Source: Isurus oxyrinchus
Taxonomy: Eukaryota
DNA: 64,000 nucleotides
Reading direction: 5' to 3'
Assembly: GCA_026770705.1 (NCBI GenBank)
Contig: JANJGN010000052.1
Coordinates: 3,348,001-3,412,000 of the forward strand
A program made the position numbers and the translations under genes. Shown here one piece after another: positions 2,602 through 2,718 of this stretch (its first letter is position 1; the number at the start of each line of letters is the position of its first letter). The notes beneath the pieces were generated by a model. It had not been told where the DNA came from. It saw only the letters and a list, made by a program, of their open reading frames with translations, and searched no databases.

Positions 2602-2718
2602 CTAATATCTACAGCAGAGACCACAAGTCTCATTTGGTTCTCTCCAATTACAGCAGTTACAGCAGAATCTGCAGAGCTGCTGTCTGCCCATTCTCTTCTG
2701 GCGCTGCAGCAAGGAGCC
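2602..2718 (-). CDS. HAMP: Hepcidin exon 3: end of the propeptide, furin site RQKR and mature peptide MGRQQLCRFCCNCCNWREPNETCGLCCRY*
   Basis: Acceptor ctgcttttccag, then 117 nt translating GSLLQRQKR|MGRQQLCRFCCNCCNWREPNETCGLCCRY-TAG. Shows the hepcidin C-x2-CC-x-CC-xn-C-G-x-CC 8-Cys pattern after an R-x-K-R site. Confidence 0.93.
   Translation of the reverse strand, partial: GSLLQRQKRMGRQQLCRFCCNCCNWREPNETCGLCCRY

What the first reader, a model, noticed from the sequence alone, without database searches (positions are those of the whole stretch)
2602..2691. Atypical mature hepcidin: 8-residue loop with an N-glycosylation sequon and no DTHFP/QSHL N-terminus
Seen: the segment between Cys5 and Cys6 is NWREPNET (8 aa, containing N-E-T), and the N-terminus is MGRQQL with no His. 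Known: human hepcidin-25 has the 4-aa loop HRSK and needs its DTHFP N-terminus for ferroportin activity; bass hepcidin (GCRFCCNCCPNMSGCGVCCRF) shares the CRFCCNCC core. Inference: this could be a glycosylated, structurally distinct hepcidin class, either antimicrobial or binding ferroportin in a different way.
Basis: partly seen in the sequence, partly recalled or inferred. Interest (0 to 1): 0.85.

Follow-up and report, generated by a model that had tools for sequence, protein, structure and literature searches.

The report
Long-loop shark hepcidin peptide
This is the last exon of an intact-looking hepcidin gene in a shark-like genome; its small cysteine-rich peptide has a hairpin loop twice the usual length and lacks the usual iron-hormone start, but nothing here shows it carries a sugar or forms a new class.

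Summary
On the minus strand, 2602-2691 encodes a 29-residue, 8-cysteine peptide after an RQKR convertase site. Its N-terminus is MGRQQL, and the Cys5-Cys6 loop is NWREPNET, which contains N-E-T.

It belongs to the hepcidin family: Pfam Hepcidin scores 32.1 bits against a cut-off of 27. It is exon 3 of a three-exon gene (7187-7095, 5183-5127, 2724-2602) with canonical splice sites and a TATA-like box. Siglec/CD22-like Ig exons lie nearby, as at the mammalian HAMP-MAG-CD22 locus.

The loop is 4 residues longer than the Pfam profile. It is 3-4 residues longer than nine published hepcidins, whose loops are 4-5 residues.

- The scaffold, both ends' spacing and the peptide size fit known hepcidins.
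- Sea bass Hamp2 has a sequon in the same loop.
- The site sits 10 residues from the C-terminus inside a tiny disulfide knot, which is a poor context for glycosylation.

My best reading (about 0.5) is a lineage-specific defence or acute-phase hepcidin paralogue. The rival (about 0.3) is the iron hormone with a co-evolved N-terminus.

I obtained no RNA, cross-species or functional evidence, because the read and protein look-ups failed or were blank. The scan has already noted this same long-loop form many times on other DNA of this genome.

The parts
2602..2724 (-). Exon 3 of the hepcidin gene: end of the propeptide, convertase site, mature peptide and stop codon
   Evidence: Acceptor ttttccag|GGC at 2724. 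Pfam Hepcidin 32.1 bits against a cut-off of 27.
2605..2691 (-). Predicted 29-residue mature peptide with 8 Cys; calculated mass 3483.0 Da with four disulfides, pI about 8.2
   Evidence: Translation; properties.
2692..2703 (-). RQKR proprotein-convertase (furin-type, R-X-K/R-R) site. A weaker R-M-G-R site three residues further on would give a 26-residue form starting with Gln.
   Evidence: Read from the sequence. The motif rule is established knowledge; PMC3325200 names RX(K/R)R for fish hepcidins.
2626..2649 (-). Cys5-Cys6 hairpin loop NWREPNET, 8 residues, net charge -1
   Evidence: There is a 4-residue insertion relative to the Pfam profile and to PDB hepcidins.
2626..2634 (-). N-E-T sequon; the next residue is Cys6, and the Asn is 10 residues from the C-terminus
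   Evidence: HMMER aligns the sequon Asn with the Asn of bass PNMSG. Occupancy was not tested.
5127..5183 (-). Predicted exon 2 (19 codons, propeptide), phase 0-0
   Evidence: It has the best splice signals of 285 candidates: ttctttctttttgcag|GTT ... ATG|gtaggt. No RNA confirmation, and no Pfam signal on its own.
7095..7187 (-). Exon 1 coding part (31 codons): start codon in a good Kozak context and a hydrophobic signal peptide; the donor AGG|gtaagc is intact
7257..7264 (-). TATA-like box TATAAGAG, 70-77 nt upstream of the ATG
   Evidence: Read.
7397..7406 (-). GGCGCC followed by AGAC on the gene strand: a BMP/SMAD-response-element-like site 214-219 nt upstream of the ATG
   Evidence: It is the only GGCGCC in the 64 kb (1.82 expected in the whole window). 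I put the chance of one falling within 300 nt of the start at about 0.01. Function not tested.

Best explanation
The stretch is the mature-peptide exon of an intact three-exon hepcidin-family gene in a cartilaginous-fish-like genome, at the ancestral hepcidin-Siglec locus.

Inferred processing: the roughly 90-residue precursor enters the ER through its signal peptide and folds into the usual four-disulfide beta-hairpin. A furin-type convertase then cuts it after RQKR, releasing a 29-residue peptide.

The four extra residues sit at the tip of the hairpin, between Cys5 and Cys6. That is far from the N-terminal six residues and the C-terminal carboxylate that human hepcidin uses to plug ferroportin. 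The insertion therefore decorates the scaffold rather than rebuilding it.

The N-terminus lacks His3 and the hydrophobic fourth residue of hepcidin-25 and Hamp1. Earlier scan notes, which I did not check, report many near-identical copies and a standard-looking hepcidin expressed in the same animal.

From these points I infer that this is a lineage-specific, amplified defence or acute-phase hepcidin. It would be functionally comparable to teleost Hamp2, with little or no direct ferroportin activity. The sequon is probably unoccupied or only partly occupied.
For: Shown here:
- Family membership and the cysteine pattern with the RQKR site.
- The core is identical to bass Hamp2-type hepcidin 1S6W.
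- The three-exon model has canonical splice sites and a TATA-like box.
- Flanking exons are V-set, Ig_CD22-like and C2-set.
- The loop insertion is at the hairpin tip.

From papers:
- Sea bass Hamp1 (QSHLSL start) lowers ferroportin, but Hamp2 (the CRFCCNCC form) does not (PMC5665920).
- Amplified hepcidin copies in teleosts are the Hamp2 defence type, while Hamp1 is a single isoform (PMC6240063).

Unchecked leads: earlier notes s1-869579 and s1-864179 say a standard-looking second hepcidin type is expressed in this animal.
Against: - I have no RNA, peptide or activity data for this copy.
- The pre-Cys1 segment keeps the hormone-type length of 6 residues.
- It also keeps the Leu6-Cys7-Arg8-aromatic9 pattern of Hamp1.
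- The C-terminal spacing is conserved.
- The only GGCGCC in the 64 kb lies in the proximal promoter, next to AGAC. This resembles the BMP-responsive element of iron-regulated HAMP genes.
- The net charge of about +2, with an acidic loop, is weak for a membrane-active antimicrobial peptide.
- Hamp2 as a clade is reported only from ray-finned fish (PMC3978493), so any resemblance to it would be convergent.
Confidence: 0.5

Rival explanations
1. It is the animal's iron-regulatory hepcidin, or one of them. The N-terminus has co-evolved with the shark ferroportin binding pocket, and the long loop points out of the transporter and is tolerated.
For: - The gene sits in the conserved hepcidin-Siglec neighbourhood.
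- Six residues precede Cys1, and Leu6-Cys7-Arg8-Phe9 is retained, as in Hamp1 (one search compared with PMC5665920 and PMC6240063).
- Two residues follow the last CC, so the C-terminal carboxylate geometry is kept (PMC9882908).
- A GGCGCC-AGAC element lies in the proximal promoter.
- Non-actinopterygian fish are reported to have only Hamp1-type genes (PMC3978493).
- Hepcidin was detected in nurse shark plasma (PMC9207270).
Against: - His3 and the hydrophobic fourth residue, conserved from teleost Hamp1 to human, are replaced by Arg and Gln.
- Earlier notes report high copy number, which is unusual for the hormone gene.
- Earlier notes also report a standard-looking hepcidin expressed in the same animal (s1-869579, unchecked).
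Confidence: 0.3
2. The peptide type is real, but this particular copy is a silent duplicate in an amplified hepcidin-Siglec array and contributes little or no transcript.
For: - Earlier notes describe many copies, some with a broken first splice donor or a frameshift (s1-869885, s1-865382, s1-864179; unchecked).
- I obtained no RNA evidence for this copy.
Against: - All three exons are open here.
- The first donor is an intact AGG|gtaagc.
- Both acceptors have pyrimidine tracts, and a TATA-like box is present.
- Four small runs guessed to be RNA hold 78-96% of the words of exon 3 plus 200 nt downstream, though they may be DNA or may come from another copy.
Confidence: 0.15
3. The mature peptide is substantially N-glycosylated on the loop Asn, which would make it a glycopeptide hepcidin.
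For: - The sequon is N-X-T, the more efficient form. It has no Pro at X or after Thr.
- It sits on the most exposed part of the hairpin.
- STT3B with MagT1/TUSC3 can glycosylate extreme C-terminal and cysteine-proximal sites (PMC4137057, PMC6683751).
Against: - The site is 10 residues from the C-terminus, so the co-translational STT3A complex cannot reach it.
- It is embedded in a tiny disulfide-rich domain, a class that depends mostly on STT3A because fast folding hides the site from STT3B (PMC6683751).
- Sea bass Hamp2 has a sequon at the aligned position. From memory, the native bass peptide is unglycosylated.
- A single sequon in a peptide with three Asn is expected by chance about one time in three.
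Confidence: 0.25
4. The long loop is an assembly or sequencing artefact.
For: The window has 11 N gaps and many repeats.
Against: - The extra 12 nt are in frame within an open exon that keeps all eight Cys.
- Ten runs from four studies hold at least half of the words of the stretch.
- The scan noted the same form on many other pieces of the genome.
Confidence: 0.02

Closest known systems
Teleost Hamp2-type hepcidin (sea bass / hybrid striped bass hepcidin, PDB 1S6W)
   Same: - Identical CRFCCNCC core and similar CG-x-CCR-aromatic C-terminus.
- A Pro-Asn-x-Ser/Thr motif at the aligned loop position (PMC5665920).
- No QSHL-type N-terminus.
- Belongs to a multi-copy family (for the shark, from earlier notes only).
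   Different: - The loop is 8 residues rather than 5, and acidic.
- Six residues precede Cys1, against 1-6 variable residues in Hamp2.
- Hamp2 is reported only from ray-finned fish (PMC3978493), so the likeness would be convergent or ancestral, not orthology.
Iron-regulatory hepcidin (human hepcidin-25, PDB 1M4F/2KEF/6WBV; teleost Hamp1)
   Same: - Eight Cys in the same spacing outside the loop.
- Six residues before Cys1 and two after the last CC.
- Leu6-Cys7-Arg8-aromatic9 as in Hamp1.
- Convertase site and three-exon gene.
- Siglec (MAG/CD22-like) neighbours.
- GGCGCC element in the proximal promoter.
   Different: - MGRQQL replaces DTHFPI / QSHLSL: there is no His3 (so no ATCUN metal site) and no hydrophobic fourth residue.
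- The loop is 8 residues and acidic, not 4-5 and basic.
Amplified hepcidin families of teleosts (e.g. six genes in Larimichthys crocea, PMC6240063)
   Same: Lineage-specific duplication of three-exon hepcidin genes, with divergence concentrated in the mature peptide.
   Different: Here the copies appear to be co-amplified with Siglec-like receptor genes over megabases (earlier notes; only one copy is in this window). The lineage is cartilaginous fish, for which I found no dedicated hepcidin study in the library.

Membership tests
Hepcidin family (Pfam PF06446, HAMP) | Profile match at or above the curated gathering score | tested here: met
   32.1 bits against 27 for the 40-residue exon, E 1.5e-07. 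The 29-residue peptide alone scores 24.9 bits, below the cut-off because it is short.
Hepcidin family (Pfam PF06446, HAMP) | Eight cysteines spaced C-x2-CC-x-CC-loop-C-x2-CC-x2 | tested here: met
   all eight are present.
Hepcidin family (Pfam PF06446, HAMP) | RX(K/R)R convertase site immediately before the mature peptide | tested here: met
   RQKR at 2703-2692.
Hepcidin family (Pfam PF06446, HAMP) | Three-exon gene: signal peptide, propeptide, mature peptide | tested here: inconclusive
   The DNA-level model has canonical GT-AG sites and a 31+19+40 codon precursor. That is within the published 81-96 residue range (PMC3978493).
Hepcidin family (Pfam PF06446, HAMP) | Hairpin loop of 4-5 residues between Cys5 and Cys6 | tested here: not met
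   8 residues. This is 4 more than the Pfam profile and human hepcidin, and 3 more than bass (PMC5665920, PMC6240063). Loop length is typical of the family rather than defining.
Hepcidin family (Pfam PF06446, HAMP) | Conserved neighbourhood with MAG/CD22-type Siglec genes | tested here: met
   V-set, Ig_CD22-like, C2-set and I-set exons at 9.9, 27.6, 38.5 and 41.1 kb. The mammalian USF2-HAMP-MAG-CD22 order is from my own knowledge. USF2 was not looked for.
Iron-regulatory hepcidin (hepcidin-25 / Hamp1 type) | N-terminal hexapeptide with His3 and a hydrophobic fourth residue (DTHFPI, QSHLSL) | tested here: not met
   MGRQQL. Only the length and Leu6 are retained.
Iron-regulatory hepcidin (hepcidin-25 / Hamp1 type) | Free C-terminal carboxylate two residues after the last CC | tested here: met
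   ...CCRY then stop; the role of the carboxylate is from PMC9882908.
Iron-regulatory hepcidin (hepcidin-25 / Hamp1 type) | Binds ferroportin and causes its internalisation; expression follows iron status | not testable with these tools
   There is only an indirect hint: GGCGCC-AGAC in the proximal promoter.
Teleost Hamp2 (antimicrobial type) | Membership of the actinopterygian Hamp2 clade in a phylogeny | not testable with these tools
   No other hepcidin precursors could be retrieved. The clade is reported only from ray-finned fish (PMC3978493).
N-glycoprotein | N-X-S/T sequon with X not Pro | tested here: met
   N-E-T at 2634-2626.
N-glycoprotein | Glycan actually attached | not testable with these tools
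   The context argues for low occupancy (PMC6683751, PMC4137057). Mass spectrometry is needed.

The most novel reading that the evidence does not exclude
Elasmobranchs use a long-loop hepcidin, glycosylated at the hairpin tip, as their main circulating hepcidin. It would control ferroportin through a non-canonical N-terminus. If so, the His3/Phe4 binding mode of bony vertebrates would be a later invention, and the hepcidin-ferroportin axis would have a different ancestral form.
Probability: 0.08. Interest if true: 0.75.

Novelty: new variant of a known kind. Interest (0 to 1): 0.4.

Why it matters
Hepcidin is the master iron hormone of bony vertebrates, and its early history is poorly documented. 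I found no dedicated study of cartilaginous-fish hepcidin in the paper library.

A shark hepcidin that keeps the scaffold and both end spacings, but replaces the ferroportin-contacting residues and doubles the hairpin loop, allows a direct test. The question is whether hormone and defence functions had already separated before bony fishes, or whether the ferroportin-binding mode has changed.

Practically, the hairpin tip seems to tolerate a 4-residue insertion and possibly a glycan. That is relevant to engineering hepcidin analogues.

Tried and rejected
1. RNA evidence. The look-up of sequencing runs listed holders. I have no splice or expression data of my own.

2. Homologue retrieval.
- The all-library HMMER search with the 40-residue exon returned only three compositional hits: F-box, RWD and Sina-zinc-finger proteins.
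- Two word-index searches found no candidate. The first used the 49-residue ORF. The second used the 57-residue open stretch scored on residues 18-57, which admits proteins of 31-99 residues.
- These blanks say nothing about novelty. Short cysteine-rich peptides cannot reach significance in these libraries, and the libraries seem to hold few vertebrate proteins.

4. Exons were handled one by one by reference. Exon 1 and exon 2 gave no Pfam match on their own.

5. The AlphaFold2 single-sequence model of the exon-3 product was two helices at mean pLDDT 69. This contradicts the solved hepcidin hairpins, so I discarded it and ran no fold search.

6. The protein atlas gave a hepcidin cluster at rank 2 with a score of only 0.76, which is a lead and not evidence.

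7. The nurse shark plasma proteome supplement held no hepcidin peptide list. Preza et al. 2011 is not held in the library.

8. I rejected the idea that the sequon is significant on its own, and the idea that 29 residues is outside the known size range.

Full report
**1. The observation**

I read the window on both strands. On the minus strand, 2724-2602 is an open exon entered through a good acceptor (pyrimidine tract, then ttttccag|GGC). It encodes GSLLQRQKR, then a 29-residue peptide (2691-2605), then a TAG stop.

The peptide begins MGRQQL and has no histidine. It carries eight cysteines in the pattern C-x2-CC-x-CC-x8-C-x2-CC-x2. The eight residues between the fifth and sixth cysteine are NWREPNET (2649-2626), ending in N-E-T (2634-2626).

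A six-frame motif scan found no second hepcidin-type exon in the 64 kb.

**2. Family**

The 40-residue exon product passes Pfam's curated threshold for Hepcidin (PF06446): 32.1 bits against 27, E 1.5e-07.
- The match aligns 34 residues to 30 profile positions, a net insertion of four.
- The two solved hepcidins that a sequence search recovers are bass hepcidin 1S6W and human hepcidin 1M4F. Both align with a four-residue gap in the Cys5-Cys6 loop.
- The CRFCCNCC core is identical to bass hepcidin.
- HMMER aligns the shark P-N-E-T with bass P-N-M-S. The shark loop therefore reads as an inserted N-W-R-E followed by a bass-like Pro-Asn-x-Ser/Thr.

**3. Gene and neighbourhood**

Exon 1. Upstream on the same strand is an exon with a start codon in a good context and a hydrophobic signal sequence (7187-7095, 31 codons). 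It ends in an intact AGG|gtaagc donor. A TATAAGAG box lies 70-77 nt before the ATG.

Exon 2. I enumerated all phase-0 exons with open frames between exons 1 and 3. The candidate with by far the best signals is 5183-5127, 19 codons: ttctttctttttgcag|GTT ... ATG|gtaggt.

The predicted precursor is 31+19+40 = 90 residues, inside the 81-96 range reported for fish pre-prohepcidins (PMC3978493).

The flanking DNA carries V-set, Ig_CD22-like, C2-set and I-set immunoglobulin exons. This matches the hepcidin-MAG-CD22 neighbourhood known from mammals (my own knowledge).

The only GGCGCC hexamer in the window lies 214-219 nt upstream of the ATG and is followed on the gene strand by AGAC. The window-wide count is not enriched: 1 observed against 1.82 expected. 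The position is what stands out; by my estimate one would fall within 300 nt of the start about one time in a hundred. It resembles the BMP/SMAD element of iron-regulated hepcidin genes, but I did not test it.

**4. How unusual is the peptide?**

I took peptide sequences printed in papers and in the PDB.

| Peptide | Loop | Length | Source |
|---|---|---|---|
| Human hepcidin | HRSK | 4 | |
| Sea bass Hamp1 | RGNKG | 5 | PMC5665920 |
| Sea bass Hamp2 | PNMSG | 5 | PMC5665920 |
| Larimichthys Hamp1 | KNKG | 4 | PMC6240063 |
| Larimichthys Hamp2 (four forms) | five-residue loops | 5 | PMC6240063 |
| This peptide | NWREPNET | 8 | |

- An eight-residue loop is outside this sample and outside the Pfam profile. 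It is also acidic (net -1), whereas the hormone-type loops are basic.
- The rest of the peptide is conservative. Six residues precede Cys1, as in hepcidin-25 and Hamp1.
- Leu6-Cys7-Arg8-Phe9 mirrors Hamp1's Leu-Cys-Arg-Trp/Tyr.
- Two residues (Arg-Tyr) follow the last CC.
- The total length of 29 is within the published 19-31 range (PMC3978493).
- The calculated mass with four disulfides is 3483.0 Da, pI about 8.2, net charge about +1.4 to +2.

I therefore regard it as a long-loop variant of the hepcidin scaffold, not a separate structural class.

**5. The N-terminus and ferroportin**

In the solved complexes, the first six residues of hepcidin and its C-terminal carboxylate contact ferroportin (PMC9882908). 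In sea bass, Hamp1 (QSHLSL start) lowers ferroportin in fish and in mouse macrophages. Hamp2, which has the same CRFCCNCC core as the shark peptide, does not (PMC5665920).

The shark peptide keeps the length of the N-terminal arm and the C-terminal geometry. It replaces His3 with Arg and the hydrophobic fourth residue with Gln. By sequence this looks like loss of the canonical binding mode, although co-evolution with the shark transporter cannot be excluded.

**6. Glycosylation**

The sequon is of the efficient N-X-T kind and sits at the exposed hairpin tip. Several points argue against high occupancy:
- It is only 10 residues from the C-terminus. Sites in the last 50 residues or so of secretory proteins are missed by the co-translational STT3A complex and depend on STT3B with MagT1/TUSC3 (PMC6683751, PMC4137057).
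- Sites inside small cysteine-rich domains tend to depend on STT3A, because rapid disulfide formation hides them from STT3B (PMC6683751). This site belongs to both classes, so I expect low or partial occupancy.
- A sequon at the aligned loop position exists in sea bass Hamp2. From my memory of Shike et al. 2002 (listed as reference 42 in PMC3978493), the native bass peptide was sequenced and weighed as a bare four-disulfide peptide.
- With three Asn in 29 residues, one sequon by chance is not rare.

I put substantial glycosylation at about 0.25.

**7. What I could not do**

I have no transcript evidence for this copy.
- Four small runs of one sample, guessed to be RNA, hold 78-96% of the sampled words of exon 3 plus 200 nt downstream. 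Six runs of a second organism label hold 52%. This argues against an assembly artefact but does not prove expression.
I could not compare with other cartilaginous fishes or with the genome's other copies.
- The single-sequence AlphaFold model was helical and of low confidence, so I discarded it.

**8. Earlier notes of this scan**

These are unchecked leads. The same long-loop, sequon-bearing, 29-residue form has been noted many times on other pieces of this genome, always among Siglec-like genes.
- Follow-up agents reported that the type is spliced and very highly transcribed.
- Some copies were reported to have a broken first donor or a frameshift.
- The same animal was reported to express a standard-looking hepcidin as well (s1-869579, s1-864179).

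I checked what I could in this window: the first donor and all three frames are intact here. The report of a second, standard type is the main reason I rank the defence-paralogue reading above the hormone reading, and I could not verify it.

**9. Verdict**

This is a real hepcidin-family gene whose peptide has a doubled hairpin loop and a non-canonical N-terminus.

| Reading | Probability |
|---|---|
| Lineage-specific, amplified defence or acute-phase hepcidin: furin-cleaved 29-mer, loop probably bare or partly glycosylated | 0.5 |
| Iron hormone with a co-evolved N-terminus (supported by the conserved end spacings and the promoter element) | 0.3 |
| This particular copy is silent | 0.15 |

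The first two rows are alternative functions for the peptide type. The third concerns only whether this copy is expressed.

It is a new variant of a known kind and appears unstudied in the literature available here. It is of moderate interest until mass spectrometry, ferroportin assays and a chondrichthyan-wide alignment are done.

Noticed in passing
window 19304-23782; also 3152-3412 and about 5580-5900: A 33-nt satellite (136 copies, 91% matches) fills 4.5 kb and produces false long ORFs on both strands. Short arrays of the same unit lie inside both hepcidin introns.
   Followed up: partly
window 7397-7406: The only GGCGCC in the 64 kb lies 214-219 nt upstream of the hepcidin start codon, followed by AGAC on the gene strand (BMP/SMAD-element-like). 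No TTCNNNGAA STAT site lies within 800 nt upstream.
   Followed up: partly
window 9904-10311, 27611-27994, 38496-38810, 41128-41517 (all minus strand): Siglec/CD22-like immunoglobulin exons (V-set, Ig_3/I-set, C2-set, V-set with a weak Ig_CD22 match) flank the hepcidin gene on the same strand.
   Followed up: partly
window 1939-2306: A compound CA-rich microsatellite lies 300-660 nt downstream of the stop codon. The only AATAAA on the gene strand within about 1.1 kb downstream of the stop is at 1755-1760. The 3' UTR would therefore be about 850 nt and include the microsatellite, unless a non-canonical signal is used.
   Followed up: no
window 6000-6900 and 7600-7720: Tandem copies of a roughly 33-40-nt unit (ctatctctgtaacctcctccagcccctacaac-like) occupy much of intron 1 and recur just upstream of the promoter.
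   Followed up: no
window 2692-2700: A second, minimal convertase motif (R-M-G-R) overlaps the start of the predicted mature peptide. Cutting there would give a 26-residue form beginning with Gln, the same length and first residue as sea bass Hamp1.
   Followed up: no
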